DNA of 64,000 nt, taken from positions 62,001 through 126,000 of IMG/VR virus record IMGVR_UViG_3300036770_008729. One strand, given 5' to 3'. Made by a program: the position numbers and the translations under genes. Every line of letters begins with the position of its first letter. Positions within the stretch are counted from its first letter, which is position 1. Shown here piece after piece: positions 1,898 to 62,020 of this stretch. The notes below the pieces were generated by a model. The model did no database searches. It saw only the letters and a program-made list of their open reading frames with translations, and had not been told where the DNA came from.

Positions 1898-2786
1898 ATT
1901 GTAGGTTATAGGAAAACATTGTATCTGAACCTTCTTCTTTATCATCATTTTCTGAATAGAAGTTAATTCCCTGATAAACTAATTCTGACATGACTTTCTC
2001 AAACATATCATAAGTAGCTCCGTGTTGTTTCATAAAATCTTCAAACTCTCTATAAGTTATTTTTTCACCTTTATCTTGTCTTGCTTTTAGTTTAGGAAAT
2101 AAATCTTCTACAATTTCCTCTACTAATTTGAAATCAGCTTTATCTCTAAATCCAGATTCAAAGCTTTCGTGAAATCTTTTAATTTTATTTTTACGATAAG
2201 GACTTAATAATCCTTTAACATTCCAAGAAGGAATAAATTGTTTATTCTTTTTTTCAAAATCTTCATAAGATTCAATTCCTGTATCAACTGGGTTTTGAAT
2301 ATATTGTATGTTAGCTCCTTGTTTATTCATATCAGAAACTCTATCACCAATATCAACACCCTTAGTCATTTTACGTAGTTTTTTCCATTGATCAACAGTT
2401 TGTTTTCTAGGTAAAGAACCTTCATTTGTTTGTGTTATAACTTCGACTGTTCCATCTAAATTGAATTTTGCAATAAATGGTGTTTCGATAGCAACATCTC
2501 TTCCTCTTAAATCACAAATGATGATTGGTCCGAACTTTTCTTGAAATTTAAGTATTTCTGAGTTAATAAATTGATCAGGTCCAAAATCTAAAGTTCTACT
2601 TACATTACGAGCACTGACTGGTTGATTTGGTAATAAACATTGTTTTTCATCATTAGTTTCTGCTAAAAATACAAATTGAAATACATCACCTGGATTGTTT
2701 TGAATTAAAGAAACTAACTTTCTAGAACCTGTGGTGTATTCCGCACTTCCTCCAAATGGTTTTAACTGACCTCTAATAATCTTCAT
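1896..2786 (-). CDS. hypothetical protein
   Basis: 296 aa ORF; internal KIKRFHESFES resembles the CTS-like motif; acidic C-terminus. Confidence 0.7.
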   Translation of the reverse strand: MKIIRGQLKPFGGSAEYTTGSRKLVSLIQNNPGDVFQFVFLAETNDEKQCLLPNQPVSARNVSRTLDFGPDQFINSEILKFQEKFGPIIICDLRGRDVAIETPFIAKFNLDGTVEVITQTNEGSLPRKQTVDQWKKLRKMTKGVDIGDRVSDMNKQGANIQYIQNPVDTGIESYEDFEKKNKQFIPSWNVKGLLSPYRKNKIKRFHESFESGFRDKADFKLVEEIVEDLFPKLKARQDKGEKITYREFEDFMKQHGATYDMFEKVMSELVYQGINFYSENDDKEEGSDTMFSYNLQ

Positions 2787-3226
2787 TATAATTCGTTAAA
2801 CTTTTTGATTTTTCCACCATCATTAGAAAGTGATTTTTCACCTTTAAGTGGTTCGTGATTTGTCTTTGCTTTTTTAGTAGGAACATCTACTTCTTGTAAA
2901 GAATTTTCAGGCTTTAATTTCTTATCCTTTTTTCCAAACTTTATAAAGTTTTGCTTTTTCATATCTTTACTAAGCTTCTGAGATTTATTATCTATTGCAT
3001 ACATTTTAACAGTTGATGCAACTTCTTCTGAAAGAAACTTTTCACCATCTAATTTTTTATTAGAAGGCTTTGTTGATTTCATAATCATTTTAGGATTACT
3101 CAATGATTTATCAGCATCTAACTTGTTATTAGTTGGATTTTTAGCTTTTACATGACCTTGCTCCTTAGCATCATCAGAAAGATTTGGTAGCTCATCATTA
3201 ATAGGATGTTGTTTCAAATGTTTCAT
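2786..3226 (-). CDS. Lys-rich hypothetical protein
   Basis: Likely start MKHLKQHPINDE at 3226, preceded by ATAAATATAAC; ends IKKFNEL. Confidence 0.65.
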   Translation of the reverse strand: MKHLKQHPINDELPNLSDDAKEQGHVKAKNPTNNKLDADKSLSNPKMIMKSTKPSNKKLDGEKFLSEEVASTVKMYAIDNKSQKLSKDMKKQNFIKFGKKDKKLKPENSLQEVDVPTKKAKTNHEPLKGEKSLSNDGGKIKKFNEL

Positions 3227-3253
3227 AGTTATATTTATCAATTATTTTTTTAG

Positions 3254-3700
3254 TTAGAACTCATCATCATCTATTATAGTTGGATCATATGGATGAAAAT
3301 CTCTTCTTTTCTTATAGTTAATTGTAGGTTTTTTCTCAATAAAATCTTCTATTTTATCATACAACCTTAAACACTCATCATCTATATCTTTTAATTGTAA
3401 TTCTTTACCATTGTAACTGATAGTTCTGTTGTTATCATCAAGTGTAACATTTCCATCCATTAGATATATGATGTAAACACCGGGTTCGATTTCTACTACA
3501 CCTTTTACAACTTTTATACCATCTTGAAGGCGAGCGGATTGAATAGAGTGATTGTCAATCATTCTGTGAATTTTTTCTAATGTATCTCTGTCCTCTTTTT
3601 TATCGATGTTCAAAACTCTACGAGTTCCTCTTACAAGTCTTTGCATTAAAGGTTCCTTTTTAGGCTCTTCAAATTCTTCGAATAATTTTATATACTTCAT
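3254..3700 (-). CDS. hypothetical protein with CTS-like N-terminus
   Basis: Starts MKYIKLFEEFE; AATATATA 4 nt upstream. Confidence 0.75.
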   Translation of the reverse strand: MKYIKLFEEFEEPKKEPLMQRLVRGTRRVLNIDKKEDRDTLEKIHRMIDNHSIQSARLQDGIKVVKGVVEIEPGVYIIYLMDGNVTLDDNNRTISYNGKELQLKDIDDECLRLYDKIEDFIEKKPTINYKKRRDFHPYDPTIIDDDEF

Positions 3701-3704
3701 ATAT

Positions 3705-3712
3705 TATATATT
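3705..3712 (-). promoter_or_regulatory. AATATATA motif 4 nt before ATG (putative phage late promoter)
   Basis: Recurrent fixed-spacing motif before many starts. Confidence 0.5.
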
Positions 3713-3724
3713 AATTTTTTTTTA

Positions 3725-3732
3725 TATATTTG
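3725..3732 (+). promoter_or_regulatory. TAnnTTTG (TATATTTG) host-type promoter element
   Basis: Upstream of ATG 3741; divergent from the AATATATA-driven gene. Confidence 0.6.
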
Positions 3733-3740
3733 TAATTGAA

Positions 3741-4265
3741 ATGAATAAATGGAAATTTATAAAAGCACTCAACTCACCACTTAAACCATTTAAGTTAAAA
3801 TTTTACTTTGGTAAAATAAGTGTAGGTGTGCCTTATTTCTTCCCACGTAGAACCGTAAAAGATCCTGGTAAACCCGGATACCTTAAATTTGTAGATAAAA
3901 AATTTGGCATTGATGTAGTTTCACTTGGATGGAAAACTAAATGGAGTAGTACTGATTATCGATTAGAATGGGAGCCAAGAATATCATTTGTTTTTTTTAA
4001 GTGGCAATTTGTTATCTTCTTCAATGCACCAGAGTCAGAACACTATTGGCCGATTTGGCTTTACTATCATAATGATACCGATAAGACTAAATCGATTAAA
4101 GAAAGAATCGAACAATGTCAACAGGAATATCCCCAGATATGGGAAAGATCTCAAAATGGAAAAAAAGAGACCATAAATTATTATGACTATGTCTTAAAAG
4201 ATAAATGGAAAAAGAAACCACTTGATGAGGTTAGAGATAAAAAATTAGATAAGATATTAAAATAA
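3741..4265 (+). CDS. aromatic-rich hypothetical protein with C-terminal RDKKLDKIL tail
   Basis: Start reassigned to ATG 3741 (MNKWKF) behind promoter motif. Confidence 0.75.
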   Translation: MNKWKFIKALNSPLKPFKLKFYFGKISVGVPYFFPRRTVKDPGKPGYLKFVDKKFGIDVVSLGWKTKWSSTDYRLEWEPRISFVFFKWQFVIFFNAPESEHYWPIWLYYHNDTDKTKSIKERIEQCQQEYPQIWERSQNGKKETINYYDYVLKDKWKKKPLDEVRDKKLDKILK

Positions 4266-4269
4266 GTTA

Positions 4270-7200
4270 TCAATTTATTTTGTTAACAATTTTGTTTATA
4301 ACCTTAATATATTCTAAATCTATAATCTTTATTAGGTAAATTCCAGTCTTAGATTCTCCTAAATCTTGTTTTATTTTAGTAATACCTTGACTAACACTTT
4401 GCTTTTTTTGACTTATAAGTTTACCACTAATATCATAAACTTCTATCATAAGCTGTGTTTGATTTTTAGTAATATATTCTACAACAAACTCATTTTGTGT
4501 TGGATTAGGATATACTTTTGCATCCACTTCATCTAATTTAATTTGTGAAGTCTTAACAATCAAACTATCATTATTAGGATTTGCTTGTCTTTGTGTTATA
4601 CAACCAGCTTGTATTACTAAAGTTCTCCAAGTACTAGTTCCACAATTAGTTACTGATCGAACTGATAAAGTTCCTCCATTGAATCCCGATGAGAATGTAA
4701 CATCGATTATTCTACTAATGGAAGAACCAGTAGTTCCATTTGGTAACATCCATTGATAACTTGTTGCGCCATTTACTGCTACAATACTGTAAGTGGATGT
4801 TGCTCCTATGTTACCACATGTTGGTCCTGAGATTGCTCCGGGCACTGGTGGTGTTTTACTTATTGATAATGTTCTTGCTGTACTTCTAACACCACAAGCG
4901 TTTTGTGCTTGAACTTGTATAGTACCTCCAGTAAATTGTGGACTAAACTGTACTAATACATTTCTAGTACCTTGACCTTGAACTATTGTGGCGTTGGATG
5001 GTGCTGTCCAAAAATATGAAGTCGCTCCTGATACTGTACTGCTTGAATACAATACATTACTTGATGTTTGATCTACATTAGTATAAGCAGAACAAACATT
5101 TGTTGTACCTGTAATTCTAGTTGGTGTTGCAGGTGCATTAGTACCCGAACTTGTGACAGTTAAGGTACTTGGTGATCCAGTACCACAACTATTGATTGAT
5201 GCCACTGTTATGTTCCCACTTACAAATGAACTTGTAATAGTGACTTGGATAGTATTAGTACCTTGACCATTGTTTAATGTAATACCATTTGGTACTGTCC
5301 AAGAATAACCAATAGTGGCGTCATACATTGGTGATATTGAGTATGAAGTAGTTGTAGCACAAGTACTTGTTGGACCACTAATCGGACCTGGTATTCCAGG
5401 TAAAGAGTTGATTGTGATAGTAGATGAAGCTGATGATATACAATTGCCTGTTGATGCAGTGTATGTCATTGTACTTGTATTTTTAGCATAAACTGTATTT
5501 CTAATATCACCAGTATAAGATTGTGTTGCTGTTGGATTTATATATAATCCAGTTAATGGTGACCAGGTTACCATTGTTGGAGCATATATACCAAACTTCA
5601 TGTTTGGACGATACTTACTACTTATAAGATTGTTTGCTTCATTAAGTGGTTCACAAACTGAAAAGTCATTATCATAACCTCCATAAACTGAGTTAAATGA
5701 AGTTTGACTAAACTCTACTGCTGAGTTTGTACCAGTACAGTTGCTACAAGAATTGTTTACATCATTGTCGTGACAGATCTCTATTACAATATTGTAAAGT
5801 GGATTCCATGTAAATGATTGATTAAAAGAATATACTTTCCATCCAACTGTAGGTGCTTGTTCTTGTCCAGTAGTGTAAACAGTTACAAAAGGACCTACGG
5901 TAACACTTAAAAGACTACCACTTTCTGTAATATAACCATAAGATAAGTTGTCATTTATGGTGTGAGCTATTTTAATTGTAAAGTTATTTTGGTAACCAGT
6001 ACCTTGTGATAGTACTTTTAATGCTAATGAATTTATATCACCAGCAACTAAACCAAGTGCAAGTAATTCTGATGATCTAATTAGATATTGCACTCTTGAA
6101 CCTTCATAGCTACTTGTATAAGGTGTAATACCTGATTGACCAGTAAGAGTTGTATTGACTCCTAATTGACGACTGAATGTAGCTGATCCTCCTGTTGCTG
6201 TTAATGTTGTAATTGAATTACTACAAGCAGTTGTTATTGAAGGTGTAACTGATAAAGCAGATGGTGTTGGGTTTATTTGTATGTCTACAGATGAAGAAGA
6301 ACTACAACCATCTAAAGTCGATGTTAAAGTATATGTTCCTTCATTATTGTATGTAGCGTTATTAATAGTTGGTGACTGTTGTGATGATGTATAGTTATTT
6401 GGTCCAACCCAACTAAATGTATTACCAATATCAGAACTTCCAATTAAACTTATAGTTGAATTTTGACATACAGAACTATTGTTTGTACTAGCATCTGTTA
6501 AAGGTATAGCTTTTATAGTCACACTAACTGGTATATTTGATGAACCACATTCTGAGGTAATAGTTAGTGAGTAGTTACCAGCATCAGCATTTGTAGTATT
6601 GTCAATTAAGAGTGATGGTGTTTCAGCACTTGGATTGATTGATGGATCAATTACTATACTATTTTTATACCATTGGTATTGCACTTGACTACCAGTTGCT
6701 ACAACTGTTAAATCTATTGGATCATTAAAACAAACAGATGATATTGTTGATGGTTGTGAAACAATTTGTAAAGTAGGTATTCCAGTTATATTAATAACAT
6801 CACTAACACTACAACTTCTGTAAGTTGAAGTTAAAGTATAACTATTTAATCCTACTAAAGCAGATGGTATAGTTGCATTTAAAGTACTTGCTGAAAAACT
6901 AGGACCTGTCCAACTGATTGTTGGTGCTACTGTATTTAAAGTAATGGTAATGCTCCAGTCATTAAATGTACCTATATCACCAGTATAGTCATCAGTAATA
7001 CGAAGTGTCCAAACACCATCAGCACTTCCAGTTAAGTTAGAAAAAGGTTGCTCAGGTGTGTATGTTCCTGTGAATGGAGCTGTACCTGATGTTATAGCGG
7101 TACCTGAAGTAGAGAATACTGTGTTAACATAGTTGTCACCAGTACTTCCATTATCACTTGATAAATCTATTGAAGAACCATTTGGAGCAATTAAAGTTAA

Positions 7201-8763
7201 ATCTAAGTCCGCATCAAATGGATGTGTTATGTTTAGTAATACTGAGGTTATTTGATTAGCATTAGCACCAGTTCCACTAACAGTAATAGTTCTGTCTATA
7301 CTTGAAACATCAGGTATTAATAATGAGGATGTATTTGAACCACTAAATGATGGATTCATATTTGGTGAAACTCCATCTAAGTTGATTTCACTACTCTGAC
7401 AAATACTAAAGTCTGTTCCGGCTTCAGCAGTTGGATAAACATTGTTTATGTTGACAGCTACATCATATACAATATTACCAGGACCAGCTCCATTTGTATT
7501 AGTACTAAATTCAAACTGCGATTCTTTAATAACATCAAACGATAAACTATTACTACCAGTTGTTGTAGGAGCAGTTACTGAAAAAGTATATGTGGTAGTT
7601 GATCCAGCAGCTAAGTTGTTAGCATCTATTTTTTGATAACTTGCTTGGTCATTCCATTTAACACCTATATTATAGTCATCTCCACCTCCATCAATCCAAG
7701 AAACAGTACCAGTATTTTTAACAGTTACAGTTATCTGACGAGTTTCTCCTGCACACCACCAAGAGTTGCCTGTATTAGAACTTATCCAAGTTGCAAGATA
7801 TGGTGTAGGTGGAGGTGTCCAAGTATAAGTTAATCCTGAGGCTGGTTTAACTGTGTTTGATAATCTTACAGTAGCACTATTAGTCCCACCTGCTGTAGTA
7901 CTTGACCAACTAGTTGTAGTTGTACGATTTGCAAAATCAGCATTAGAATTTCCTCTTAATCCAATTTCAAAACCAACTGCTGTAGTGTTTGTAGGTCCAA
8001 GTATGCTGTAGACAAAATCTATCGTATTTGTTGTCTCGTTTAATCTAATTTGAAAATCATACAATTCACCAAAACCACCATTTGTAGTATATCTTTGAAA
8101 TCCAGTCCATTGAACTACTAATGTTTGATTTGGAGCAGTTCCAATTGTTTCATAACGAATACCAAATTTTGGATTTGAAAATCTGAAATGAAAACCAGTA
8201 CCTTTTGAAGTTGCTGCGGATGATATTGTAACTGTGTTTGTTCCTATAGCAGTTACAGTTGCATTGTTTGGTATACCAGATCCTGATACCTTATCACCGA
8301 TAGATATTTGACTAATATCACCACTTGTTATTGTGATTGTAGTACTACCACTTGTTCTATTTGCTAAAAAAGAACCTCTACCAATTAAGTCTCCTCCCAT
8401 AGCAGATATTACGTTGTTGGAGGTTCCCAAAGATAATGGGGACATACTGTTTATTGGTAAAGTACCTAATGAAATCCAACCATTAGTACTGATACCAAAC
8501 TGAGTGTAGATTGTATTGTTATAAACAAAATTAAACCCAATTGGTAGTAACGCTGATGAGACGTTATCGTCTAAAAATCCTGCTGTAGTATTTGGTAATG
8601 TTCCAGTATATACACTGTTTGTCCAATTAGTAAAGTTGTTGTAATTGGTTCCTCCTGTAATTTCAGTATATGTTCCTGATGAGGATGAAAAGGTATAATT
8701 ATTTACTTGTGATAATAAGTTGAATGAAATTAGAGTAAGAAGAAGGGTTAGTAATTTTTTCAT
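4270..8763 (-). CDS. large secreted multidomain protein with T9SS type A C-terminal sorting domain (P-proprotein-like, Ig-like and PKD-like repeats)
   Basis: Signal peptide MKKLLTLLLTLISFNLLSQ (ATG 8763); P-domain (LNITHPFDADLDLTLIAPNG...GVWTLRITDD); PKD-like repeats (YSWTVPNG...GQGTNTI); CTD VYPNPTQ...IEVYDISGKLI...GIYLIKI. Confidence 0.85.
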   Translation of the reverse strand: MKKLLTLLLTLISFNLLSQVNNYTFSSSSGTYTEITGGTNYNNFTNWTNSVYTGTLPNTTAGFLDDNVSSALLPIGFNFVYNNTIYTQFGISTNGWISLGTLPINSMSPLSLGTSNNVISAMGGDLIGRGSFLANRTSGSTTITITSGDISQISIGDKVSGSGIPNNATVTAIGTNTVTISSAATSKGTGFHFRFSNPKFGIRYETIGTAPNQTLVVQWTGFQRYTTNGGFGELYDFQIRLNETTNTIDFVYSILGPTNTTAVGFEIGLRGNSNADFANRTTTTSWSSTTAGGTNSATVRLSNTVKPASGLTYTWTPPPTPYLATWISSNTGNSWWCAGETRQITVTVKNTGTVSWIDGGGDDYNIGVKWNDQASYQKIDANNLAAGSTTTYTFSVTAPTTTGSNSLSFDVIKESQFEFSTNTNGAGPGNIVYDVAVNINNVYPTAEAGTDFSICQSSEINLDGVSPNMNPSFSGSNTSSLLIPDVSSIDRTITVSGTGANANQITSVLLNITHPFDADLDLTLIAPNGSSIDLSSDNGSTGDNYVNTVFSTSGTAITSGTAPFTGTYTPEQPFSNLTGSADGVWTLRITDDYTGDIGTFNDWSITITLNTVAPTISWTGPSFSASTLNATIPSALVGLNSYTLTSTYRSCSVSDVINITGIPTLQIVSQPSTISSVCFNDPIDLTVVATGSQVQYQWYKNSIVIDPSINPSAETPSLLIDNTTNADAGNYSLTITSECGSSNIPVSVTIKAIPLTDASTNNSSVCQNSTISLIGSSDIGNTFSWVGPNNYTSSQQSPTINNATYNNEGTYTLTSTLDGCSSSSSVDIQINPTPSALSVTPSITTACSNSITTLTATGGSATFSRQLGVNTTLTGQSGITPYTSSYEGSRVQYLIRSSELLALGLVAGDINSLALKVLSQGTGYQNNFTIKIAHTINDNLSYGYITESGSLLSVTVGPFVTVYTTGQEQAPTVGWKVYSFNQSFTWNPLYNIVIEICHDNDVNNSCSNCTGTNSAVEFSQTSFNSVYGGYDNDFSVCEPLNEANNLISSKYRPNMKFGIYAPTMVTWSPLTGLYINPTATQSYTGDIRNTVYAKNTSTMTYTASTGNCISSASSTITINSLPGIPGPISGPTSTCATTTSYSISPMYDATIGYSWTVPNGITLNNGQGTNTIQVTITSSFVSGNITVASINSCGTGSPSTLTVTSSGTNAPATPTRITGTTNVCSAYTNVDQTSSNVLYSSSTVSGATSYFWTAPSNATIVQGQGTRNVLVQFSPQFTGGTIQVQAQNACGVRSTARTLSISKTPPVPGAISGPTCGNIGATSTYSIVAVNGATSYQWMLPNGTTGSSISRIIDVTFSSGFNGGTLSVRSVTNCGTSTWRTLVIQAGCITQRQANPNNDSLIVKTSQIKLDEVDAKVYPNPTQNEFVVEYITKNQTQLMIEVYDISGKLISQKKQSVSQGITKIKQDLGESKTGIYLIKIIDLEYIKVINKIVNKIN

Positions 8764-8982
8764 GGTCAATAATTACTTTTAGTATATATTCAATAAATGT
8801 AAAAATTGATGAATGAAAAAGAAAGAATCGAAATTTATACAAATTGTCTACAGAATTTCTACAAATAATTTTACTCCGATATTTGTTATTATCATCCTGG
8901 TAGATTTATCACTCTGGATAAATTAAGAAGTGATAAGTTAAATATGTTGGGGATTTAATTTGGTCTCCAATAGATTTTTCAC

Positions 8983-8990
8983 TATTTTTG
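8983..8990 (+). promoter_or_regulatory. TAnnTTTG (TATTTTTG) element 4 nt before ATG 8995
   Basis: Consensus match with conserved spacing. Confidence 0.6.
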
Positions 8991-8994
8991 TATT

Positions 8995-9142
8995 ATGACT
9001 CTAAATGAATTAGAAAAAATAGCAGACTTTTATATGATGGATTTAGAATCTATCATTGATGATATTGATGGTGCAGTAGGCTTTTGAGGAAAAACCTAAA
9101 TCAGAAATAAGAAATGATAAATTAGAAGAATTGGGAATATGA
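8995..9142 (+). pseudogene. small gene split by a +1 frameshift at TTT-TGA (mutation, assembly error or programmed shift)
   Basis: MTLNELEKIADFYMMDLESIIDDIDGAVGF stops at 9085-9087; +1 frame continues EEKPKSEIRNDKLEELGI and ends in an ATGA overlap with the next gene. Confidence 0.55.
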
Positions 9143-9420
9143 TGACAATAGACGAATTAAAATCTTTAAGAAAAGGAGAATTGGTTGTTTTCACTAAGAT
9201 AGATGAAAAGATTACTGAATATCATAATCACCAAGTAGGTGATGAAATGATTTTTATAGAAATTGAAGACGCATATAAGATTGGATCAAGTGGTAGAGAT
9301 GTTGTTAATTTTCTAAGAAACTCATACACAATCTCACACTTCTCTTATGAGATATGCCATTATATAGAAAGAAAATCTAAACTAGAAAGAGATAGAAAAA
9401 TAAAAGACTTAGGACTATGA
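9139..9420 (+). CDS. hypothetical protein (SH3/KOW-like start) with RDRKIKDL tail
   Basis: LRKGELVVF start; ATGA overlaps on both sides. Confidence 0.7.
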   Translation: MMTIDELKSLRKGELVVFTKIDEKITEYHNHQVGDEMIFIEIEDAYKIGSSGRDVVNFLRNSYTISHFSYEICHYIERKSKLERDRKIKDLGL

Positions 9421-9818
9421 AATTTTACTATGATAATAATATAGGATATGAATGCTCCTGGAAAAATAATCTGAAAGGTGGTTATAATTCTTGGTCCAAT
9501 ATGGAATTTGCTAAAATTAAAGTAAGAATACCTATTAGTCTATACAGAAAGATTCTATTTGACTTAAAAGAATATGATGGTGACGATCCTACTTTAGAAT
9601 TTAAGATTTATAAATTTAAAAATGAGGAAGTAGATTGGGGAACTTATTCAACAAACGATGCTGAACTTTGGAAATACATTGCTATCATAGAAAGAATATC
9701 TTATTCATCGGAATTTAATGATAATACTGTTATGGCTCAAATTGAATGTTTAATTCAATATAATGATAAGTGTAATAAGTCAGAGTTAAGAGATGTGATT
9801 TTAAGTGAGTTGATATGA
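9417..9818 (+). CDS. hypothetical protein with RDVILSEL tail
   Basis: 133 aa ORF, coupled to neighbours. Confidence 0.7.
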   Translation: MKFYYDNNIGYECSWKNNLKGGYNSWSNMEFAKIKVRIPISLYRKILFDLKEYDGDDPTLEFKIYKFKNEEVDWGTYSTNDAELWKYIAIIERISYSSEFNDNTVMAQIECLIQYNDKCNKSELRDVILSELI

Positions 9819-10039
9819 ATTTACCAGATAGTATTCCACATAGTATAGATTGTCCTTGTGGACAAATTGCTAATTTAGAATGGCAGTATCCAAGTGCTCT
9901 TCATAAATATCTATCTTATTATTGTAAGGATTGTAAAAATTCATTCACAACAACTTCATCTGATGAGGTATCAATGTGTATTTTCAATTCTAAGAAAAGA
10001 AGTCTTAAACGAAAAAATAAAATTAAAAAAATTATATGA
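9815..10039 (+). CDS. zinc-ribbon-like protein with RKNKIKKII tail
   Basis: CPCG...CKDC cysteine pairs. Confidence 0.65.
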   Translation: MNLPDSIPHSIDCPCGQIANLEWQYPSALHKYLSYYCKDCKNSFTTTSSDEVSMCIFNSKKRSLKRKNKIKKII

Positions 10040-10052
10040 TGCTTTTAAAAGC

Positions 10053-10083
10053 GAAAAACAGGAGTAGCGAATTCCTGTTTTTC
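10053..10083. terminator. inverted repeat, likely terminator
   Basis: gaaaaacagga-gtagcgaat-tcctgtttttc, 11 bp perfect stem after ORF 9815-10039. Confidence 0.6.
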
Positions 10084-10221
10084 TATAGCCATAGCCATAC
10101 CGGTCCCAAAAGGGGCATACTAGCCCACCGGTTAAAATTATATATTAAAAATTAAACTTCCGTAAAAATAAAAAGTAAAAAGAAAAGAAAGGCAAATAAA
10201 TGTTTAACTTAAAACCAAACA

Positions 10222-10533
10222 ATGGTGAAGAACGAAATCAAAATTGAGTTGTCAAACTCAGAAACCTTAAAATCAATTTTTGAAAAAGCTTACTTTGAAG
10301 AAGGAATTCAGGGTAAAATTATTGGAAAAAATAACTACATTACAATCATACCAGAAGATGATATTAATTGGACTATTTTTAAAGGTCTAAATAATGTTAC
10401 TGTTAAAATTACAAACGAAATCATCGATGGTGCTGCTCGATTCTTAATCGATGATACACATGATACTGAAATAAGATTATATCCTATTTCTATCTATTGT
10501 ATCAAAGAAGAAGATAGATATATCTTTTATTAA
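10222..10533 (+). CDS. hypothetical protein
   Basis: 103 aa ORF with a long A-rich leader. Confidence 0.7.
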   Translation: MVKNEIKIELSNSETLKSIFEKAYFEEGIQGKIIGKNNYITIIPEDDINWTIFKGLNNVTVKITNEIIDGAARFLIDDTHDTEIRLYPISIYCIKEEDRYIFY

Positions 10534-12736: not shown

Positions 12737-12781
12737 AAAAATATTTATATTTTAGGTATATATTAAAAAACTTTTAGACAA

Positions 12782-13818: not shown

Positions 13819-14895
13819 TTAAGCATTAAAGTTTTTAGAATTTTTCAATTTCTCTAAAATTGATTTTTCTTCTAAATTAATACTTTTAGGTATAGAAATT
13901 GAAATCTTTACAAATAAGTCACCAAGTCCTAAATTGATATCGGGAACTCCTTTACCTGTTAGTCTTATTACTTTGCCGTGATGTGTTCCTGGTTCTATTG
14001 TTATTGAAACTTCTCCATGTGGAGTTTTAACTTTTAGGTTTGCTCCAATGATGGCATCAATAACTGAGATATTCTTTTCAACAATTATATTATTCTGTTC
14101 TCTGGTAAAATAAAATTCTCTAATTTCTTCAACTACAATTTGTAAATTACCTGGAACACCATCTTTTATATGATTTCCATACCCGGTCATATTAAGTTGC
14201 ATTCCATTAGAAACTCCAATTGGAATTTCTACTTCTATTGTTTCTTCTCTTAATTGTGTACCGTCACCATAACATTGACCACATTTATTTTTGACTTGTT
14301 TGCCGGCACCGCCACAATCAGGACAAGTTGTAGTTTGTCTTATTTGACCAAATGGTGTATTTTGAACAACTGTTCTATTTCCCGATCCACCACAAGGTAA
14401 ACAATCTCTAGTATCAGTTCCACCCTTTCCATTACAAGAGTTACAACTGTATTGTCTTTTATATTTTAATTTCTTCTTACAACCTTTAATAATTTCATCA
14501 ATTGTAAGTGAGACTTTTATTCTTAAATCGGCACCTCTTGCTTGAGGTCTTTGTTGATAGTTTCTATTCCTATTTCCGAAACCACCACCGAATATGTCTC
14601 CAAATTGACTGAAGATATCATCCATGTTAAATCCATGTCCTTGTCCGCCAAATGGATTACCTCCTCCAAATGGATTACCATCAGCTGTTCCAAATCTGTC
14701 ATAATTAGCTCTTTTTTGAGAGTCTGACAAAACATCATATGCTTCGGCTGCTTCTTTAAATTTAGATTCTGCATCAGGATTTCCTGGATTTCGGTCAGGA
14801 TGGTATTGCATAGCCATCTTACGGTAGGCTTTCTTTATTTCATCTTCTGATGAACCTTTGTTAACTCCTAATATATTGTAGTAATCTTTACTCAT
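13819..14895 (-). CDS. dnaJ: DnaJ chaperone
   Basis: J domain DYYNILGV...HPD, G/F region, four CxxCxGxG zinc repeats, C-terminal domain. Confidence 0.96.
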
Positions 14896-14917
14896 AATCT
14901 TTTTATTATATCAAATT

Positions 14918-28422: not shown

Positions 28423-28439
28423 AAAATAGACCCAATTTT

Positions 28440-29702: not shown

Positions 29703-29703
29703 A

Positions 29704-40870: not shown

Positions 40871-40900
40871 ATAAGTATATATTAATATACTTTTTTGAAA

Positions 40901-43701: not shown

Positions 43702-43709
43702 AATATATA
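43702..43709 (+). promoter_or_regulatory. AATATATA motif 4 nt before ATG 43714
   Basis: Heads the CTS-like gene cluster. Confidence 0.5.
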
Positions 43710-53796: not shown

Positions 53797-53826
53797 TTTC
53801 ATCTTGTGAATTTTAATATATAACTT

Positions 53827-55003: not shown

Positions 55004-55363
55004 ATGAACTGCAAATTAATTTTTACCATAATTTTTCTAATCACTTCGATTGTTGTTAAGTCGCAAACATTCAATATCACTGATAGAAATGGTTATACCG
55101 ATGAAGTTATTGTCAAATACCAATCAGCTTTGAATGGTGCTGATTTAGAAAATTTCAGAGGAAAAACAATCACAAAAACATTCGAGTTTACAAACGGAAT
55201 AAAGTTCACTCTAATTTCTGCAAAAGAACTTTTCATTTCCGGAAAATCAATCGACTTAAATCTTTACAAAGATGAAAGACCAGAAAGTTACAGAGAGCCT
55301 GTTTTCTTTCTGACCGATACTGGTTACTTATTGGCTCAATATAAAAAATTAGAAAAACAATGA
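55004..55363 (+). CDS. secreted protein with signal peptide, coupled to T9SS cargo gene
   Basis: MNCKLIFTIIFLITSIVVKSQ; ATGA overlap with next gene. Confidence 0.7.
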   Translation: MNCKLIFTIIFLITSIVVKSQTFNITDRNGYTDEVIVKYQSALNGADLENFRGKTITKTFEFTNGIKFTLISAKELFISGKSIDLNLYKDERPESYREPVFFLTDTGYLLAQYKKLEKQ

Positions 55364-58300
55364 AAAAATTAACTCTATTTTTAATTGCGACCTTATTTAG
55401 TTTCATTGCAATTTCACAACCAGCAAATAATAATTGTGGAACTGCTCAAAACTTAGGAACATTACCAACTCCAGCGGCTTGTCCCAATGGTGTAGGTGCG
55501 AATGTCAATGTTACTGGAACAACTGTAAATGCTACTTATCCACTACCTTATAATTACTTATTAGGTTGTCAAACTGGTGGAAATCAACCAGCACCATCTC
55601 CTGATGTTTGGTATCAATTTGTGGCATCTGGAAATCAAGTCAATATAAATATAACACCTGGTTCTAGTCCATTTTTAGCTAATCCATCTATCACTCTTTG
55701 GTCTGGTAGTTGTGGTTCATTGAATGGATTCAACTGTGATAATAATGGATCTAACAATGGTAATAACTCTGCTACATTTGAACCATTAACACCAGGTCAA
55801 ACTTATTACATACAAATATCAGGTTCTTCTGCAACATCAACTGGTAACTTTAATATGACAGTAAACGCTAGTAATGATTGCAATAATTGTCTTCAAAATG
55901 TAAGTTTGGTTGCTACACCTAATCCAGTCAATGGATTTTATCAACCTGGTCAAACTATAAACTTTTGTTTAACAATAACTGGATATAATCAAGTAAGTTC
56001 AAATTGGCTTCATGGGGTAATACCAACTTTTGGTAATGGTTGGAATCTAGCTACACTTACAACAACACCGGCCAATTCTTGTTCAACTGCTGGAAATTGG
56101 CAATGGGCAAACTCTAACACATCAACTGCAACAAATCTCATCACAGGTCCCGGATTCTACTATTTCTCAGGATCTGGAGGTTCTGGTAATAACTTTGGAG
56201 ATAATGGATCGACTTGTACAAGAACTTTTTGTTGGTCTATTCAAACAAAATCAGGTTGCACATCAGGAAATAACTTAAATATATCAGTAAATACAACCGC
56301 TGATGGTGAAACTGGTTCTTGGACAAGTCCTGCTTGTCAGGGTGATCCAAATATAAACTTTGCTGCTCAATTGAATTGTTGTCAAACTACGGCTACATCA
56401 ACTTCTCTAACTTGTTTCGGTGGAACAAATGCTACGGCTACTGCAAATCCAACAGGTGTATCACCATTTAACTACTCTTGGAATACAACACCAGTTCAAA
56501 CAACTCAAACCGCTACTGGTCTTTCTGCTGGAAGTTATACAGTAACAGTAACTGATAACGGTGGTTGTGTTTCATCAGCCTCTGTTACAATCACTCAACC
56601 AACACAACTTCAAGTTACAACCACTTCAACAAATGCTAGTTGTGGTCAATTAAATGGATCTGCAACTGCTACTGCTTCAGGTGGAACTGGACCTTACTCC
56701 TACTCTTGGAATACAACTCCTGTTCAAACAACTGGAACCGCAACTGGACTTGGACCTGGAACTTATACAGTAACCGCAACATCTGCTGGTAACTGTCAAT
56801 CAACGGGTACGGTTACTATTTCATCAACTGGTTCAATAACTGCAACCTCGACATCAACTAATGTTACTTGTAATGGTGCAAATAATGGAACAGCTACTGC
56901 TAATCCAAATGGTTCTACTAATTATACTTATTTGTGGAATACAATACCTCCACAAAATACTCAAACCGCCACAGGTTTAGCTCCTGGTAGTTATACTTGC
57001 ACAGTGACAAGTTTTGGATGTCAGACAACTACAACAGTAACTATCACACAACCTCCAGTTTTAACTGCAGCAATAACAACATCAAATGTAATTTGTAATG
57101 GTGGAAATACTGGTTCGGCAGTTGTTACACCAAATGGTGGAACACCAGGATATACTTATCTTTGGACAACCTCACCAAATCAAATAACTGCTACTGCTAC
57201 AAATCTTACATCAGGAACTTACTCTGTAAATGTAACTGATTTGAATGGTTGTACTGTTATAGCATCAGCGAACATTACCCAACCTCAACAATTAAATATA
57301 ACTTTGGTATCATCACAGAATCCAGGATGTAGTGGTTCTTCAACTGGTCAAATTGTGGTTTCTGCATCAGGTGGTGTTGGACCTACTTACTTTTACACTT
57401 TGAATGGTGGAACTCCACAAACATCAGGAACTTTTACTGGATTATCAGGTGGAACTTATACTATTTCTGTAAGTGATGCAAATAACTGCACACAACAAAT
57501 ACAGGTTTCTTTGACTCAACCTTTTCCTATTTCTTCTTCTTATACAGTAACAAATGTTAATTGTAATAGTGGAAATAACGGACAAATACAATTAACGACT
57601 ATTGGAGGAACACCTCCATATACTTATCTTTGGTCTAATTCTTCTCAATCTCCAAATCTCACATCACTTACAGCGGGAACTTATTCAGTTGTTATTACGG
57701 ATGCTTCGGGTTGTCAATTTAATTTGACTAATATAGTAGTTACTCAACCAAATGCTATTAATATACTTTTAACTCCGAATCCATCTTCGATTTGTATTGG
57801 ACAATCTTCAAGTATCACTGCACTTATTGTTGGTGGGACTTTACCATACAACTTTGTATGGTCTAATGGTCAATTAACACAAAATATAACTGTTACACCT
57901 ACTACAACAACTGGTTATACTTTACAAGTATCAGATGCAAATGGTTGTGGACTTAGTGCTAATACGATTATTAATGTTAATCCACCACTCACTGTTTTAA
58001 CAACTTCCTCACAAGGAACTATTTGTGTTGGTCAATCATCGACATTAACTGCTAGTGTGACCGGAGGTAATGGTGGACCATATACTTATAACTGGAATCC
58101 AACAGCTCAATCTGGTCAGTCAATAATAGTAACACCGGGAACTACCACACTTTACACAGTGACAGTAGGTGATGGTTGTTCTACACCAGTAACTAGCACA
58201 GTAACAGTAAATGTTAATTTACTTCCGGTTGTTCAATATACAACAACTGCACTTTCAGGATGTGAGCCTTTAACTGTTACTTTTACCAATAATACACCAA

Positions 58301-58977
58301 ATGTAAATTGTGTTTGGTTTATAAATGGTAATCAAGTAACAAACTGCACCACATCTCAATCTTTTAATACATCTGGAAGTTATTCAGTAACTCTTTCAGT
58401 GACCAATACAAATGGTTGTTCTAACACATCACCAAATATATTGGTGAATGTTTATCCAAAGGCGGTTTCTAACTTTTCAGCTAACCCAATTGTAACAGAT
58501 TTATTAAACCCAAATGTTAGTTTTACCAACTTCTCTACCTCAGGAAATTATCAGTGGTCTTTTGGAGATGGAAACATTTCTTCACTTATAAACCCACAGA
58601 ATACCTATTCTGATACTGGAAGTTATAATGTTCAGTTAATTGTTGTTTCACCTGATGGGTGTAGGGACACTTCTTCACTTGAGATATACATAAGTGATTT
58701 ATTTACATTTTATATTCCTAATGCTTTTACACCGAATGGTGATGGTAAAAATGATGTATTCACACCTCAGATAAGTGGTGCAGAGTGGTATCAATTCTGG
58801 ATTTACAACAGATGGGGAGAGCAAATTTGGGACTCTGGAACTAATGGTGAACCTTGGAATGGAATCTATAAAGGTAGTTTAGTTCAACAAGATGTTTATG
58901 TTTGGAAGTTGATTGTAAAGGAAAAACAACGAGGCAAAAAGCATTTATTTACAGGACATGTTAGTGTTATTAAATAA
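55360..58977 (+). CDS. SprB-repeat/PKD adhesin-like protein with T9SS type B (gliding motility-associated) C-terminal domain
   Basis: Signal peptide; repeated YSWNT...ATGL..G.YTVTVTD..GC units; PKD (WSFGDG); CTD YIPNAFTPNGDGKNDVF...IYNRWGE...WNG...DVYVWK. Confidence 0.9.
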   Translation: MKKLTLFLIATLFSFIAISQPANNNCGTAQNLGTLPTPAACPNGVGANVNVTGTTVNATYPLPYNYLLGCQTGGNQPAPSPDVWYQFVASGNQVNINITPGSSPFLANPSITLWSGSCGSLNGFNCDNNGSNNGNNSATFEPLTPGQTYYIQISGSSATSTGNFNMTVNASNDCNNCLQNVSLVATPNPVNGFYQPGQTINFCLTITGYNQVSSNWLHGVIPTFGNGWNLATLTTTPANSCSTAGNWQWANSNTSTATNLITGPGFYYFSGSGGSGNNFGDNGSTCTRTFCWSIQTKSGCTSGNNLNISVNTTADGETGSWTSPACQGDPNINFAAQLNCCQTTATSTSLTCFGGTNATATANPTGVSPFNYSWNTTPVQTTQTATGLSAGSYTVTVTDNGGCVSSASVTITQPTQLQVTTTSTNASCGQLNGSATATASGGTGPYSYSWNTTPVQTTGTATGLGPGTYTVTATSAGNCQSTGTVTISSTGSITATSTSTNVTCNGANNGTATANPNGSTNYTYLWNTIPPQNTQTATGLAPGSYTCTVTSFGCQTTTTVTITQPPVLTAAITTSNVICNGGNTGSAVVTPNGGTPGYTYLWTTSPNQITATATNLTSGTYSVNVTDLNGCTVIASANITQPQQLNITLVSSQNPGCSGSSTGQIVVSASGGVGPTYFYTLNGGTPQTSGTFTGLSGGTYTISVSDANNCTQQIQVSLTQPFPISSSYTVTNVNCNSGNNGQIQLTTIGGTPPYTYLWSNSSQSPNLTSLTAGTYSVVITDASGCQFNLTNIVVTQPNAINILLTPNPSSICIGQSSSITALIVGGTLPYNFVWSNGQLTQNITVTPTTTTGYTLQVSDANGCGLSANTIINVNPPLTVLTTSSQGTICVGQSSTLTASVTGGNGGPYTYNWNPTAQSGQSIIVTPGTTTLYTVTVGDGCSTPVTSTVTVNVNLLPVVQYTTTALSGCEPLTVTFTNNTPNVNCVWFINGNQVTNCTTSQSFNTSGSYSVTLSVTNTNGCSNTSPNILVNVYPKAVSNFSANPIVTDLLNPNVSFTNFSTSGNYQWSFGDGNISSLINPQNTYSDTGSYNVQLIVVSPDGCRDTSSLEIYISDLFTFYIPNAFTPNGDGKNDVFTPQISGAEWYQFWIYNRWGEQIWDSGTNGEPWNGIYKGSLVQQDVYVWKLIVKEKQRGKKHLFTGHVSVIK

Positions 58978-60601: not shown

Positions 60602-62020
60602 ATGAAGAATATTTTTTTAACTTTAATATTTTCTCTGATATCAAATCTTTGCTTATCACAAGCTTATTCTACCTGTGCATTAGCCTCTGCGGGTATAGCT
60701 ATATCAAGTGGTGGGTGTATTAATAATCAAACCTTCACAGGGAGTGTAAATATGGCCGGTCTTTGTGTAGGCGGTAATAATCCAGCAATTCACATTAAGT
60801 TTGTAGCTGGTTCTTGTTCACAATTTACAATTACACCAACTGCCAATATCGCTAACATAGGAACTCAAATTCTAACTACTGCGTGTAGTGGTGTTGTTGG
60901 TACAACTGCTTGTCACGAAAATGTTATTGCTGGTGTTCCATTTATGGCAGATGCACATGATAATAGTGGTAATTATTTATTGACACCAGGTACAACTTAT
61001 GTTTTGAGAATATGGGGTGCTGTAGGTACCTCAACATTTAATATTTGTTATAATTCTGGAGTAACAGAGAATCCATCAAACGAATGTTCTGGTGCGTTTG
61101 GTTTAGGAACACTTCCTACGCAGTTTTATAATGGTGGTGATTGCTCATTTACTGGATCTGGAACTGATGCTACAACTTCGGATCCAGCTGCTTCTGGTTT
61201 GTGTGCTGGTTCATTGGAAAATACTCAATGGATTAAATTTCAACCATTGGCTGGTGTTTCTACATTTCAAATTATTGGTAGTTCTATCAATTGTACTGGT
61301 GGTGGATGTGGATTTCAATTTGGTATATTTTCAGGAAGTTGTGGATCTTTAATCTCTGAGGGTTGTTATGGGAATAAAGTTTGCTCTGGTGGACAGTCTG
61401 TATCAGGTCCTACTAACGTTAGTGCTACTGATGGATTTTCAATAGCTTGGTCTGGTACTTCTACAACTGGATTTACAGCAACTATTACAAAAACCGGTGG
61501 TGGTAATTTTATCGGTACAGAGGTTTTTTACTTAGTTATGGATGGCAATGCTGATGCTGATTGTCAATATACTTTACAAGGAACAAATTTACAGGCTTTA
61601 CCAATTGAATTAATCTCTTTTGAAGGTCATTTCAATGGTGAGTTAAACGTTTTACAGTGGTCATGTGCAACTGAAATAAATAATGATTATTTTAGTTTAG
61701 AAAGGTCGGATGATGGAGTAAGTTGGGGAAGTATTGTAAATATATCAGGTGTAGGTAATTCCAACTTAATAACAAATTACTCTTATTATGATAATACTTT
61801 TTTACCTGAAAGGTTTAATTACTATAGATTAAAACAAGTTGACTTCGATGGTAGTTTCAAGTACTTTGATATTATTGCAATAAACAATATGAATATAAAT
61901 AAGCCTAAACTACTAAGAGTTTATAATATCTTAGGGAATAAAGTAGACAAAGAATCAACTGGACTATTGATATATGAATACTCAGATGGTAGTTTCAAAA
62001 AGACATTCGTTAAAGATTAA
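60602..62020 (+). CDS. Cys/Gly-rich secreted protein with Bacteroidota T9SS-type C-terminal region
   Basis: Signal peptide; LPIELISF...WSCATEINNDYFSLERS...YYRLKQVDFDG; short CTD VYNILG...YEYSDGSFKK. Confidence 0.8.
   Translation: MKNIFLTLIFSLISNLCLSQAYSTCALASAGIAISSGGCINNQTFTGSVNMAGLCVGGNNPAIHIKFVAGSCSQFTITPTANIANIGTQILTTACSGVVGTTACHENVIAGVPFMADAHDNSGNYLLTPGTTYVLRIWGAVGTSTFNICYNSGVTENPSNECSGAFGLGTLPTQFYNGGDCSFTGSGTDATTSDPAASGLCAGSLENTQWIKFQPLAGVSTFQIIGSSINCTGGGCGFQFGIFSGSCGSLISEGCYGNKVCSGGQSVSGPTNVSATDGFSIAWSGTSTTGFTATITKTGGGNFIGTEVFYLVMDGNADADCQYTLQGTNLQALPIELISFEGHFNGELNVLQWSCATEINNDYFSLERSDDGVSWGSIVNISGVGNSNLITNYSYYDNTFLPERFNYYRLKQVDFDGSFKYFDIIAINNMNINKPKLLRVYNILGNKVDKESTGLLIYEYSDGSFKKTFVKD

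What the first reader, a model, noticed from the sequence alone, without database searches (positions are those of the whole stretch)
4270..8763. Phage-encoded 1497 aa type IX secretion (T9SS type A) cargo protein
Seen: Sec signal peptide, P-proprotein-like, Ig-like and PKD-like modules, and a type A CTD (VYPNP...YDISGK...GIYLIKI). It is flanked by phage hypotheticals and preceded by AATATATA (8783-8790). Established: type A CTDs route proteins through the Bacteroidota T9SS to the surface. Inference: the phage uses the host T9SS to decorate the infected cell (superinfection exclusion, aggregation, grazing resistance) or to occupy the translocon.
Basis: partly seen in the sequence, partly recalled or inferred. 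Interest (0 to 1): 0.8.

Follow-up and report, generated by a model that had tools for sequence, protein, structure and literature searches.

The report
Huge-phage gene for T9SS-secreted adhesin
A roughly 600-kb phage of Bacteroidota carries an intact 1497-residue, enzyme-free, adhesin-like protein with the export signals of its host's type IX secretion system; this kind of gene has been reported in phages before, but not in this huge-phage clade.

Summary
ORF 4270-8763 (-) encodes 1497 aa. It has a Sec signal peptide that would expose Gln after cleavage (Bacteroidota Q-rule). Behind it lie CARDB-like, P-domain, Ig-like and three PKD_6 modules, then a terminal type A sorting domain (TIGR04183 39.6 bits, cut-off 23). 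No catalytic domain was found.

The gene is phage-borne. It lies on a 598-kb contig that is syntenic on both sides with the curated 642-kb huge phage LR756502.1. Its GC3 fits the genome, and it carries the genome's recurrent upstream motif AATATATA. It sits in a variable island that LR756502.1 lacks.

The window also holds a SprB-repeat protein with a type B sorting domain. That protein has orthologues in two curated huge phages.

Most likely the phage makes a fibrillar adhesin that host Sec and T9SS (PorV shuttle) place on, or release from, the infected cell. What that achieves for the phage is inference only.

Phage-encoded T9SS cargo was already described (Bellas 2020; de Jonge 2019), so this is a new member of a known kind. 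The conserved N-terminal "head" domain matches no Pfam family, and no solved structure matches it as a whole. It recurs in 34 other IMG/VR contigs.

The parts
4270..8763 (-). Complete gene for the 1497-aa T9SS type A cargo protein (stop codon 4270-4272).
   Evidence: The identical protein with identical neighbours is on three contigs.
8710..8763 (-). Signal peptide, residues 1-18 (MKKLLTLLLTLISFNLLS). The predicted SPI cleavage would expose Gln19 (Bacteroidota Q-rule).
   Evidence: Sequence inspection. Q19 is nearly invariant in the alignment of relatives. Q-rule: PMC5837995.
7804..8709 (-). Conserved N-terminal 'head' domain, residues about 19-320. All-beta, no Pfam family, NIDO-like ISTNGWISLG motif.
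   Evidence: 71-76% identical to the N-termini of proteins with other architectures. 34 further IMG/VR contigs and 210 genome loci carry relatives. No Pfam hit in 77 members. AF2 pLDDT 86, with no whole-domain PDB match (best E 0.04).
8170..8382 (-). Beta-barrel insert of about 71 aa inside the head domain (residues about 128-198).
   Evidence: Present in 18 of 77 relatives, including all viral ones. Locally resembles a small domain of phage tail-collar and tailspike proteins: 8eci 30% id; BFVD A0A291LAU2 34% id, rmsd 1.1.
7510..7755 (-). CARDB-like beta-sandwich (residues 337-418), below the Pfam cut-off.
   Evidence: 19.7 bits, cut-off 22.7.
6943..7245 (-). Proprotein-convertase P-domain (residues 507-607) with no protease domain beside it.
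   Evidence: 41.7 bits. No Peptidase_S8 hit at E <= 0.1.
6277..6735 (-). Two Ig-like domains (residues 677-829).
   Evidence: This is the best-matching stretch to the Ig-repeat shaft of GhpA, PDB 9flp.
5464..6216 (-). Unassigned beta-rich region (residues about 850-1100).
   Evidence: No Pfam hit. Atlas look-alikes are unnamed Bacteroidota proteins and Ig_7/GEVED/CARDB clusters. Not a detectable duplicate of the head domain.
4564..5436 (-). Three PKD_6 domains (residues about 1110-1400; limits approximate).
   Evidence: 139 bits, 3 stretches, best 1124-1203.
4285..4515 (-). T9SS type A C-terminal sorting domain (residues 1417-1493).
8783..8790 (-). AATATATA, 20-27 nt upstream of the ATG. One copy of a motif that recurs upstream of genes in this genome.
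55360..58977 (+). Second T9SS cargo gene in the window: 1205 aa with a signal peptide (S|Q), 5 SprB repeats, PKD and a type B sorting domain.
   Evidence: TIGR04131 44.7 bits, cut-off 35. Orthologues in LR756502.1 and LR745206.1.
60602..62020 (+). Third signal-peptide protein (472 aa). Its C-terminal tail resembles that of the 690-820-aa viral relatives of the head domain. No recognised sorting domain.

Best explanation
What it is. The gene is an accessory gene of a huge (about 600 kb) phage that infects Bacteroidota. It encodes a long, non-enzymatic, fibrillar adhesin-like protein. The protein has a conserved N-terminal head domain on a stalk of CARDB-like, P-domain, Ig and PKD beta-sandwiches. 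It ends in a canonical type A T9SS sorting domain.

How it most likely works. These steps are inferred from established T9SS biology and are not shown here:
1. The gene is transcribed from the phage's own AATATATA-type upstream element.
2. The protein is exported by host Sec, cleaved by signal peptidase I before Gln19, and cyclised to pyroglutamate.
3. It crosses the outer membrane through the host SprA/Sov translocon and is collected by the generic PorV shuttle.
4. The sorting domain is removed, and the protein is either fixed to the cell surface or released.

Because type A cargo needs only the generic PorV shuttle, the phage needs no accessory gene of its own.

Likely effect. The surface of the infected cell changes. 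The cell would adhere or aggregate differently, or its receptors would be masked against further phages. Which of these applies is not known.
For: Cargo identity:
- Complete ORF with a signal peptide and Q at +1.
- TIGR04183 and PF18962 above their curated cut-offs, at the extreme C-terminus.
- The sorting domain aligns to that of PDB 9whd.
- No catalytic family found.
- Ig/PKD repeats resemble the shaft of the T9SS-secreted GhpA fibre.

Phage-borne:
- The gene lies on a 598-kb contig and has identical neighbours in three separately assembled samples.
- Both flanks are syntenic with the curated 642-kb phage LR756502.1 at 48-76% aa identity. The island between the flanks differs.
- The region is in IMG/VR.
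- The window holds T4 gp13-like, T4-type split topoisomerase II and Rnl1 genes.
- GC3 is 0.145 against a window mean of 0.195 (sd 0.034).
- The gene shares the upstream motif that is enriched 17-fold before genes.
- A contig from another study bridges the 5' junction at 100% identity.

Clade habit:
- Type B cargo orthologues occur in two curated huge phages.
- Head-domain relatives with signal peptides occur on 34 other IMG/VR contigs.

Literature:
- Genomes over 634 kb of this clade are predicted to infect Bacteroidetes (PMC7162821).
- All type A sorting domains use PorV, which is in excess or recycled, and they lead to anchoring or release (PMC12618676, PMC9143113).
Against: - No expression or secretion data exist. 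No RNA run was listed.
- The host is not identified, so the presence of a T9SS in it is inferred.
- The signal peptide was judged by eye only.
- The head domain has no known ligand or fold relative.
- Its small insert resembles a domain of phage tail proteins, which leaves a virion role open.
- IMG/VR calls only the first 281 kb of the 598-kb contig viral.
- The three contigs that carry the gene probably come from one study.
Confidence: 0.78

Rival explanations
1. The protein is a virion-associated adhesin: a tail-fibre-like or Hoc-like decoration protein. In this reading the sorting domain serves only as one more Ig-like module, or the secreted protein decorates virions after lysis.
For: - Ig and PKD domains are common on virions.
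- The 71-aa insert locally resembles a domain of tail-collar and tailspike proteins.
- A gp13-like neck gene lies 3 kb away.
- crAss-like phages carry T9SS-sorting-domain ORFs near head genes (PMC6949934).
Against: - The Sec signal peptide with Q at +1, plus a terminal sorting domain, would send the protein out of the cytoplasm, where virions assemble.
- There is no PHROG match at all.
- There is no homologue in 50,697 GenBank phage records.
- Bacterial relatives of the head domain also start with signal-peptide-like N-termini.
Confidence: 0.07
2. The gene is a passenger: a host adhesin gene recently captured in a variable island, with no role for the phage.
For: - It sits in an island that is absent from LR756502.1.
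- The protein is a mosaic of segments 62-76% identical to different proteins.
- The head-domain clade mixes viral and MAG contigs.
Against: - A 4.5-kb ORF is intact in a 30% GC genome.
- GC3 is fully phage-like.
- The gene carries the phage's own upstream motif.
- A full-length homologue (P0001) and many signal-peptide-bearing relatives occur in other viral contigs.
Confidence: 0.08
3. The element is not a phage. The contig would be a bacterial chromosome piece, a megaplasmid or a chimera, and the gene an ordinary bacterial T9SS cargo gene.
For: - The window holds many cell-like genes: DnaK/DnaJ/GrpE, PrkA-DUF444-SpoVR, GMP reductase.
- IMG/VR keeps only 281 of the 598 kb.
Against: - Both flanks are syntenic with a circularised, curated phage genome that carries the same cell-like genes.
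- The window also holds gp13-like, T4-type topoisomerase II, Rnl1 and phage antiterminator/endonuclease PHROG genes.
- About 91% of the window is coding, with many orphan small ORFs.
- The context is the same in three assemblies.
Confidence: 0.04
4. The protein acts as a translocon or shuttle competitor. Mass production of the cargo would block export of host T9SS proteins, for example surface receptors.
For: Phage resistance in Flavobacterium maps to gliding and T9SS genes (PMC9804748), so T9SS-dependent surface proteins matter for adsorption.
Against: - Highly produced type A fusions are secreted without blocking, and PorV is in excess or recycled (PMC12618676).
- A conserved head domain and a long stalk are not needed for jamming.
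Confidence: 0.03

Closest known systems
T9SS cargo genes of 'Cryophage' (Bellas et al. 2020, PMC7468147)
   Same: Phage-encoded proteins with type A sorting domains, located in variable regions of the phage genome. They were proposed to use the host T9SS and to play a part in competition or superinfection.
   Different: The Cryophage genes are an endoglucanase, a GH39 protein and a PA14 protein. This protein is a 1497-aa enzyme-free adhesin-like protein on a genome of about 600 kb, which also carries a type B cargo gene.
crAss-BACON ORFs with a T9SS sorting domain (de Jonge et al. 2019, PMC6949934)
   Same: A Bacteroidota phage ORF made of repeated beta-sandwich modules with a T9SS sorting domain.
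   Different: Those ORFs have BACON repeats, lie near head and tail genes and were discussed as tail fibres. This protein has no BACON domain, has a clear signal peptide, and sits in an island of orphan genes.
Bacterial T9SS fibrillar adhesins, e.g. GhpA grappling hook of Aureispira (PDB 9flp), SprB and RemA of Flavobacterium johnsoniae
   Same: Long chains of Ig/PKD-like domains exported by Sec and the T9SS. The match to GhpA has E 2e-96 over 21 repeat stretches.
   Different: The similarity was seen for the repeat shaft. The head domain belongs to another, unnamed family. The protein is far shorter than GhpA or SprB. It carries a type A sorting domain, not the type B one that SprB carries.
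Q-rule signal-peptide proteins of Porphyromonas gingivalis phages (Matrishin et al. 2023, PMC10367356)
   Same: Phage proteins with signal peptides that expose Gln. That paper reads this as adaptation to the host's export pathway and as potential to modify the outer membrane.
   Different: That paper does not mention the T9SS or sorting domains at all.
Surface and membrane proteins of huge phages (Al-Shayeb et al. 2020, PMC7162821)
   Same: Same clade of very large Bacteroidetes-predicted phages. The paper notes that phage proteins are predicted at the membrane or cell surface and may affect susceptibility to infection.
   Different: The main text contains no word beginning with 'secretion', so the T9SS is not discussed there. 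The type A cargo gene has no homologue in those genomes. The type B SprB-like gene does.

Membership tests
T9SS type A cargo (TIGR04183 / PF18962 sorting-domain proteins) | A domain that matches the type A sorting-domain model above the curated cut-off and lies at the extreme C-terminus | tested here: met
   TIGR04183 39.6 bits (cut-off 23), residues 1417-1493 of 1497. PF18962 41.3 bits (cut-off 27).
T9SS type A cargo (TIGR04183 / PF18962 sorting-domain proteins) | N-terminal Sec / signal peptidase I signal peptide | tested here: met
   MKK, a hydrophobic core and S18|Q19 seen by inspection. Gln at +1 fits the Bacteroidetes Q-rule (PMC5837995). No signal-peptide predictor was available.
T9SS type A cargo (TIGR04183 / PF18962 sorting-domain proteins) | Sorting domain folds as a seven-strand Ig-like beta-sandwich | not tested
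Only sequence alignment to the C-terminal domain of 9whd (E 5e-5) and weakly to 8glj_D is available.
T9SS type A cargo (TIGR04183 / PF18962 sorting-domain proteins) | The producing cell has a T9SS (SprA/Sov, PorV, PorU and others) | not testable with these tools
   The host is unknown. Relatives over 634 kb are predicted to infect Bacteroidetes (PMC7162821). The cargo's bacterial relatives are nearly all from Bacteroidota.
T9SS type A cargo (TIGR04183 / PF18962 sorting-domain proteins) | T9SS-dependent secretion with removal of the sorting domain | not testable with these tools
   This needs expression in wild-type and T9SS-mutant cells.
Phage-encoded T9SS cargo (as in Cryophage, PMC7468147) | The gene lies on a phage genome | tested here: met
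   Synteny with curated phage LR756502.1; IMG/VR entry; gp13-like and T4-type replication genes; phage-like GC3 and upstream motif.
Phage-encoded T9SS cargo (as in Cryophage, PMC7468147) | The gene lies in a variable region of the phage genome | tested here: met
   Window 2786-10222 has no counterpart between the conserved flanks in LR756502.1. Contigs from another metagenome carry the gene body with different ends.
Subtilisin/kexin-type proprotein convertase | Peptidase S8 catalytic domain before the P-domain | tested here: not met
   Only the P-domain matches. There is no peptidase family in Pfam or NCBIfam at E <= 0.1.
Phage virion decoration or tail-fibre proteins | Match to a known phage structural family | tested here: not met
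   No PHROG family at E <= 0.001. No tblastn match in 50,697 phage records. Only a local fold resemblance of a 71-aa insert.
T9SS type B cargo with cognate shuttle (neighbour gene 55360-58977) | Type B sorting domain above the cut-off | tested here: met
   TIGR04131 44.7 bits (cut-off 35). CHU_C 50.1 bits.
T9SS type B cargo with cognate shuttle (neighbour gene 55360-58977) | porP/sprF-like shuttle gene directly downstream | tested here: not met
   The ORFs at 59011-59430 and 60118-60540 have no Pfam hit, and 59419-60225 is FMN_red-like. A PorP/SprF gene was seen only in the related contig L007.

The most novel reading that the evidence does not exclude
Huge Bacteroidota phages of this clade carry a whole, exchangeable set of T9SS-routed surface proteins and use it to reprogram the adhesion and gliding surface of the infected cell. 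The set would include:
- type A adhesins in variable islands;
- a conserved SprB-repeat type B protein that must borrow a host PorP/SprF shuttle and may be fed to the gliding machinery;
- proteins with an unrecognised C-terminal tail;
- in one putatively related contig (L007), a PorP/SprF shuttle gene.

The unnamed N-terminal head domain would be the shared binding module.
Probability: 0.25. Interest if true: 0.75.

Novelty: new member of a known kind. Interest (0 to 1): 0.45.

Why it matters
If the protein is secreted as predicted, very large environmental phages do more than replicate inside Bacteroidota. They also add their own adhesins to the host surface through a phylum-specific secretion system.

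T9SS and gliding surface proteins matter for phage adsorption in Flavobacterium (PMC9804748). Phage-made cargo could therefore change superinfection, aggregation on particles, and the fate of infected cells in freshwater and subsurface communities.

The finding also points to an unnamed, widespread N-terminal domain family. It has 210 genome loci and 35 viral loci, matches no Pfam family, and has no solved structural relative as a whole. It looks like the functional tip of many T9SS adhesins.

Tried and rejected
1. Head-domain fold. The first AF2 model used a 14-sequence alignment and was poor (pLDDT 63). Its Foldseek search gave nothing. A 77-sequence alignment gave a good model, but there was still no PDB match at E <= 0.001.
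2. Internal duplication. I tested whether the unassigned region 850-1100 repeats the head domain. This is not supported.
3. TANFOR polymorphic-toxin N-domain (PMC7073777). I considered it, but there is no NCBIfam hit, so I rejected it.
4. Further sorting domains in the window. A phmmer search with both sorting domains found only the two known genes.
5. PorP/SprF genes in phages. There is none in the curated huge phages, and none in IMG/VR by a single-sequence scan.
6. A phage-specific head-domain clade. This is not clean. The clade also holds MAG contigs with 36-66% GC, and two Chryseobacterium isolates share the insert.
7. Sigma-70-type promoter scan. It found no more sites than in shuffled sequence.
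8. Read evidence.
   - Run X1 laid nothing, which is a filter artefact.
   - X4 bridges only the 5' junction under the 31-nt rule.
   - X5 shows the gene body in another context.
9. RNA runs. None was listed.


Full report
THE OBSERVATION

The ORF listed at 4270..8769 on the minus strand is real. From the ATG at 8763 it encodes 1497 residues.

The N-terminus is MKKLLTLLLTLISFNLLS|QVNN. It has a basic n-region and a hydrophobic core of about 14 residues, followed by a small residue and then Gln. Cleavage there would expose Gln19. This is the "Q-rule" that is specific to signal peptidase I substrates of Bacteroidetes (PMC5837995). The SprB-like protein and the 472-aa protein of the window, and all viral relatives, show the same S|Q pattern. 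No signal-peptide predictor was available, so this rests on inspection.

Pfam finds the following:
- a weak CARDB-like module at 337-418;
- a proprotein-convertase P-domain at 507-607 (41.7 bits);
- Ig-like modules at 677-829;
- three PKD_6 domains (139 bits);
- Por_Secre_tail at 1417-1492 (41.3 bits, cut-off 27).

NCBIfam TIGR04183, the type A sorting domain, scores 39.6 bits against a cut-off of 23. The match ends four residues before the stop codon. The tail aligns to the C-terminal domain of the solved GH167 enzyme 9whd (E 5e-5). It aligns weakly to a Por sorting-domain chain, 8glj_D. No catalytic family was detected. The P-domain stands without a protease domain.

IS THE GENE PHAGE-BORNE?

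Contigs. The exact protein, with identical neighbours, is on a 598,435-bp JGI contig, a 26-kb JGI contig and a 22-kb Logan contig. These are three separately assembled samples, probably from one study. The same region is in IMG/VR as a 281-kb viral genome. By coordinates, that entry covers only the first part of the 598-kb contig. I did not resolve why.

Relatives. The only DNA match among 50,697 GenBank phage records is LR756502.1, a 642-kb huge phage. Al-Shayeb et al. report their largest genomes (634, 636, 642 and 735 kb) as manually curated and circularised. They predict that all genomes over 634 kb replicate in Bacteroidetes (PMC7162821).

Synteny. Gene order is conserved on both sides of the finding. 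On one side lie w_462 and w_1896. On the other lie w_10222, a GMP-reductase-like gene, a T4 gp13-like neck gene, DnaJ and GrpE. Identities are 48-76% at the protein level. The stretch between these blocks (window about 2786-10222) has no counterpart in LR756502.1, which has no large ORF there. The cargo gene therefore lies in a variable island of a phage genome.

Gene content of the window:
- T4-type split topoisomerase II;
- T4 Rnl1-type RNA ligase;
- a CCA-adding or poly(A) polymerase;
- a 5'-3' exonuclease;
- an amidase;
- PHROG endonuclease and antiterminator families;
- the cell-like genes typical of huge phages (DnaK/DnaJ/GrpE, PrkA-DUF444-SpoVR).

Two tests speak against a recent or artefactual insertion:
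- Composition. The gene's GC3 is 0.145. The window mean is 0.195 with sd 0.034. Its somewhat higher overall GC comes from amino-acid content.
- Upstream motif. There are 26 copies against 13 +/- 4 in shuffles. Fifteen of them lie in sense within 60 nt upstream of the 82 crude gene starts, where about 0.9 are expected. The genes concerned include the gp13-like gene and the topoisomerase subunit A gene. The cargo gene shares this phage-typical upstream element.

Contigs from other studies:
- In a marine metagenome (X4), a contig bridges the 5' junction at 100% identity.
- In an aquatic metagenome (X5), two contigs carry residues about 27-1492 at 96-98% nucleotide identity. Beyond both ends they continue with unrelated sequence. 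The gene body therefore also circulates in another context.

WHAT KIND OF PROTEIN IS IT?

The protein is a mosaic:
- Residues 1-320 are 71-76% identical to the N-termini of proteins with quite different downstream modules (Ig_7, fn3, GEVED).
- Residues 307-661 are 62% identical to part of P0016.
- Residues 642-1385 are 62% identical to part of P0002.
- One full-length homologue exists: P0001, 1594 aa, 67% and 54% identical over the two halves. It also carries a type A sorting domain.

The N-terminal head is thus the best-conserved part. It has relatives on 34 other IMG/VR contigs at 57-68% identity. These are 690-820-aa proteins, all with S|Q signal peptides. It also has relatives at 210 loci in bacterial genomes, almost all from Bacteroidota. 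None of 77 members matches a Pfam family.

With a 77-sequence alignment, AlphaFold gives a confident all-beta model (pLDDT 86, pTM 0.85). No solved structure matches it at E <= 0.001. The best whole-domain match among predicted viral structures is an uncharacterised protein of an uncultured phage (TM 0.47).

A 71-residue beta-barrel insert is present in all viral relatives, in the closest MAG hits and in two Chryseobacterium isolates. It is absent from 58 other relatives. It locally resembles a small domain of phage tail-collar and tailspike proteins.

In a tree, the window's head domain falls in a supported clade (96/82 and 98/94). The clade holds all the viral rows and four or five MAG contigs of varied GC. 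It is nested among Bacteroidota sequences. The domain is therefore shared between phages and bacteria, and the direction of transfer is not settled.

The Ig/PKD part matches the repeat shaft of GhpA, the T9SS-secreted grappling-hook fibre of Aureispira (E 2e-96, 21 stretches). This fits an elongated stalk.

The protein has no PHROG match. It has no tblastn match in any GenBank phage record.

THE WIDER SET OF SECRETED PROTEINS

The window holds a second T9SS cargo gene at 55360-58977. It has a signal peptide, five SprB repeats, PKD domains and a type B sorting domain (TIGR04131 44.7 bits, cut-off 35).

This gene has counterparts in two curated huge phages:
- In LR756502.1: a 1670-aa protein with 13 SprB repeats and CHU_C, syntenic after the topoisomerase subunit A gene.
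- In LR745206.1: a 1205-aa protein with PKD and CHU_C.

T9SS cargo is thus a habit of this phage clade. As far as the main text of the huge-phage paper goes, this was not discussed there.

Type B cargo normally needs a cognate PorP/SprF shuttle in stoichiometric amounts, usually encoded directly downstream (PMC12618676, PMC9143113). No such gene follows here. A PorP/SprF gene (TIGR03519, 224 bits) does lie beside a head-domain protein on contig L007. L007 shares the island-flanking gene w_3606 with the window. Whether L007 is a phage was not established.

A third signal-peptide protein (60602-62020) ends in a tail like that of the 690-820-aa viral relatives. No sorting-domain model recognises that tail.

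MECHANISM

Shown here:
- the export signals;
- the enzyme-free, stalk-and-head architecture;
- the location on a phage genome;
- the shared regulatory motif.

Inferred from published T9SS work: the protein is exported by Sec and crosses the outer membrane through the T9SS. It is collected by PorV, loses its sorting domain, and is then anchored or released. All type A sorting domains use PorV. PorV tolerates varied sorting domains and copes with highly produced cargo (PMC12618676). A phage-borne type A cargo should therefore work without any phage-encoded helper.

The physiological role is speculation. The candidates are altered adhesion or aggregation of infected cells, and masking of surface receptors. 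The link to receptors is plausible because phage resistance in Flavobacterium maps to gliding and T9SS genes (PMC9804748). The same PorV data make translocon jamming unlikely.

NOVELTY

Phage-encoded type A cargo in variable regions was described for "Cryophage", with the same line of interpretation (PMC7468147). A T9SS sorting domain on a crAss-like phage ORF was noted in 2019 (PMC6949934). Q-rule signal peptides in phage proteins were noted in 2023 (PMC10367356).

This is therefore a new member of a known kind. Three points are modestly new:
- the huge-phage setting;
- the coexistence of type A and type B cargo in one genome;
- the unnamed head-domain family.

No expression data were found. 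No RNA run was listed.

Noticed in passing
window 55360-58977 (+); L124 6001-11013; L123 3127-6744: A second T9SS cargo gene: a SprB-repeat protein with a type B sorting domain. Orthologues sit in the curated huge phages LR756502.1 (syntenic) and LR745206.1. No porP/sprF-like shuttle gene follows it in the window, so it would have to use a host shuttle.
   Followed up: partly
window 60602-62020 (+); L010-L039 C-termini: A 472-aa signal-peptide protein ends in ...YNILGNKV..GLLIYEYSDGS..K.... The 690-820-aa viral relatives of the head domain end in a similar tail. Pfam and NCBIfam see no sorting domain there, although the L005 homologue has Por_Secre_tail. This may be an unrecognised or shortened sorting signal.
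   Followed up: partly
window, 26 sites, e.g. 12757-12764, 40876-40883, 43702-43709, 48163-48170, 53815-53822: AATATATA is enriched about 17-fold in sense just upstream of gene starts. It often begins only 12-14 nt before the start codon. This suggests a phage-specific promoter element, possibly with very short leaders.
   Followed up: partly
L007 2369-3346 (JGI 3300007216, 56-kb contig): A PorP/SprF-family T9SS shuttle gene (TIGR03519, 224 bits) lies between a Por_Secre_tail protein and a head-domain protein. The contig shares the island-flanking gene w_3606 with the window. If the contig is a phage, it would encode a T9SS component.
   Followed up: partly
window 4288-8685 in run X5: Two contigs from an aquatic metagenome of another study carry the gene body at 96-98% identity. 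Beyond both ends, including the signal-peptide codons and the last codons, they continue with unrelated sequence. This points to recent modular exchange.
   Followed up: no
window 13819-16205, 20408-22273, 26500-31200: The window holds a full DnaK/DnaJ/GrpE chaperone set and a PrkA-DUF444-SpoVR operon. DnaJ, GrpE and SpoVR homologues were found in LR756502.1.
   Followed up: no
JGI contig Ga0310126_0000009 versus IMGVR_UViG_3300036770_008729: IMG/VR lists only about the first 281 kb of the 598-kb contig as viral. The status of the remaining 317 kb is unknown. It could be a trimming artefact on a gene-rich huge phage, or a chimera further along the contig.
   Followed up: no
window 8170-8382 (-), residues about 128-198: The head domain holds a 71-aa beta-barrel insert. 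It locally resembles a small domain in phage tail-collar and tailspike proteins (8eci 30% id; BFVD A0A291LAU2 34% id, rmsd 1.1). It is present in only 18 of 77 relatives.
   Followed up: partly
window 8906-8913 / 8929-8936 and 8945-8972: The 375-nt region upstream of the cargo gene holds an 8-bp inverted repeat (TTATCACT ... AGTGATAA) and a terminator-like hairpin on the plus strand. Neither was tested against chance.
   Followed up: no
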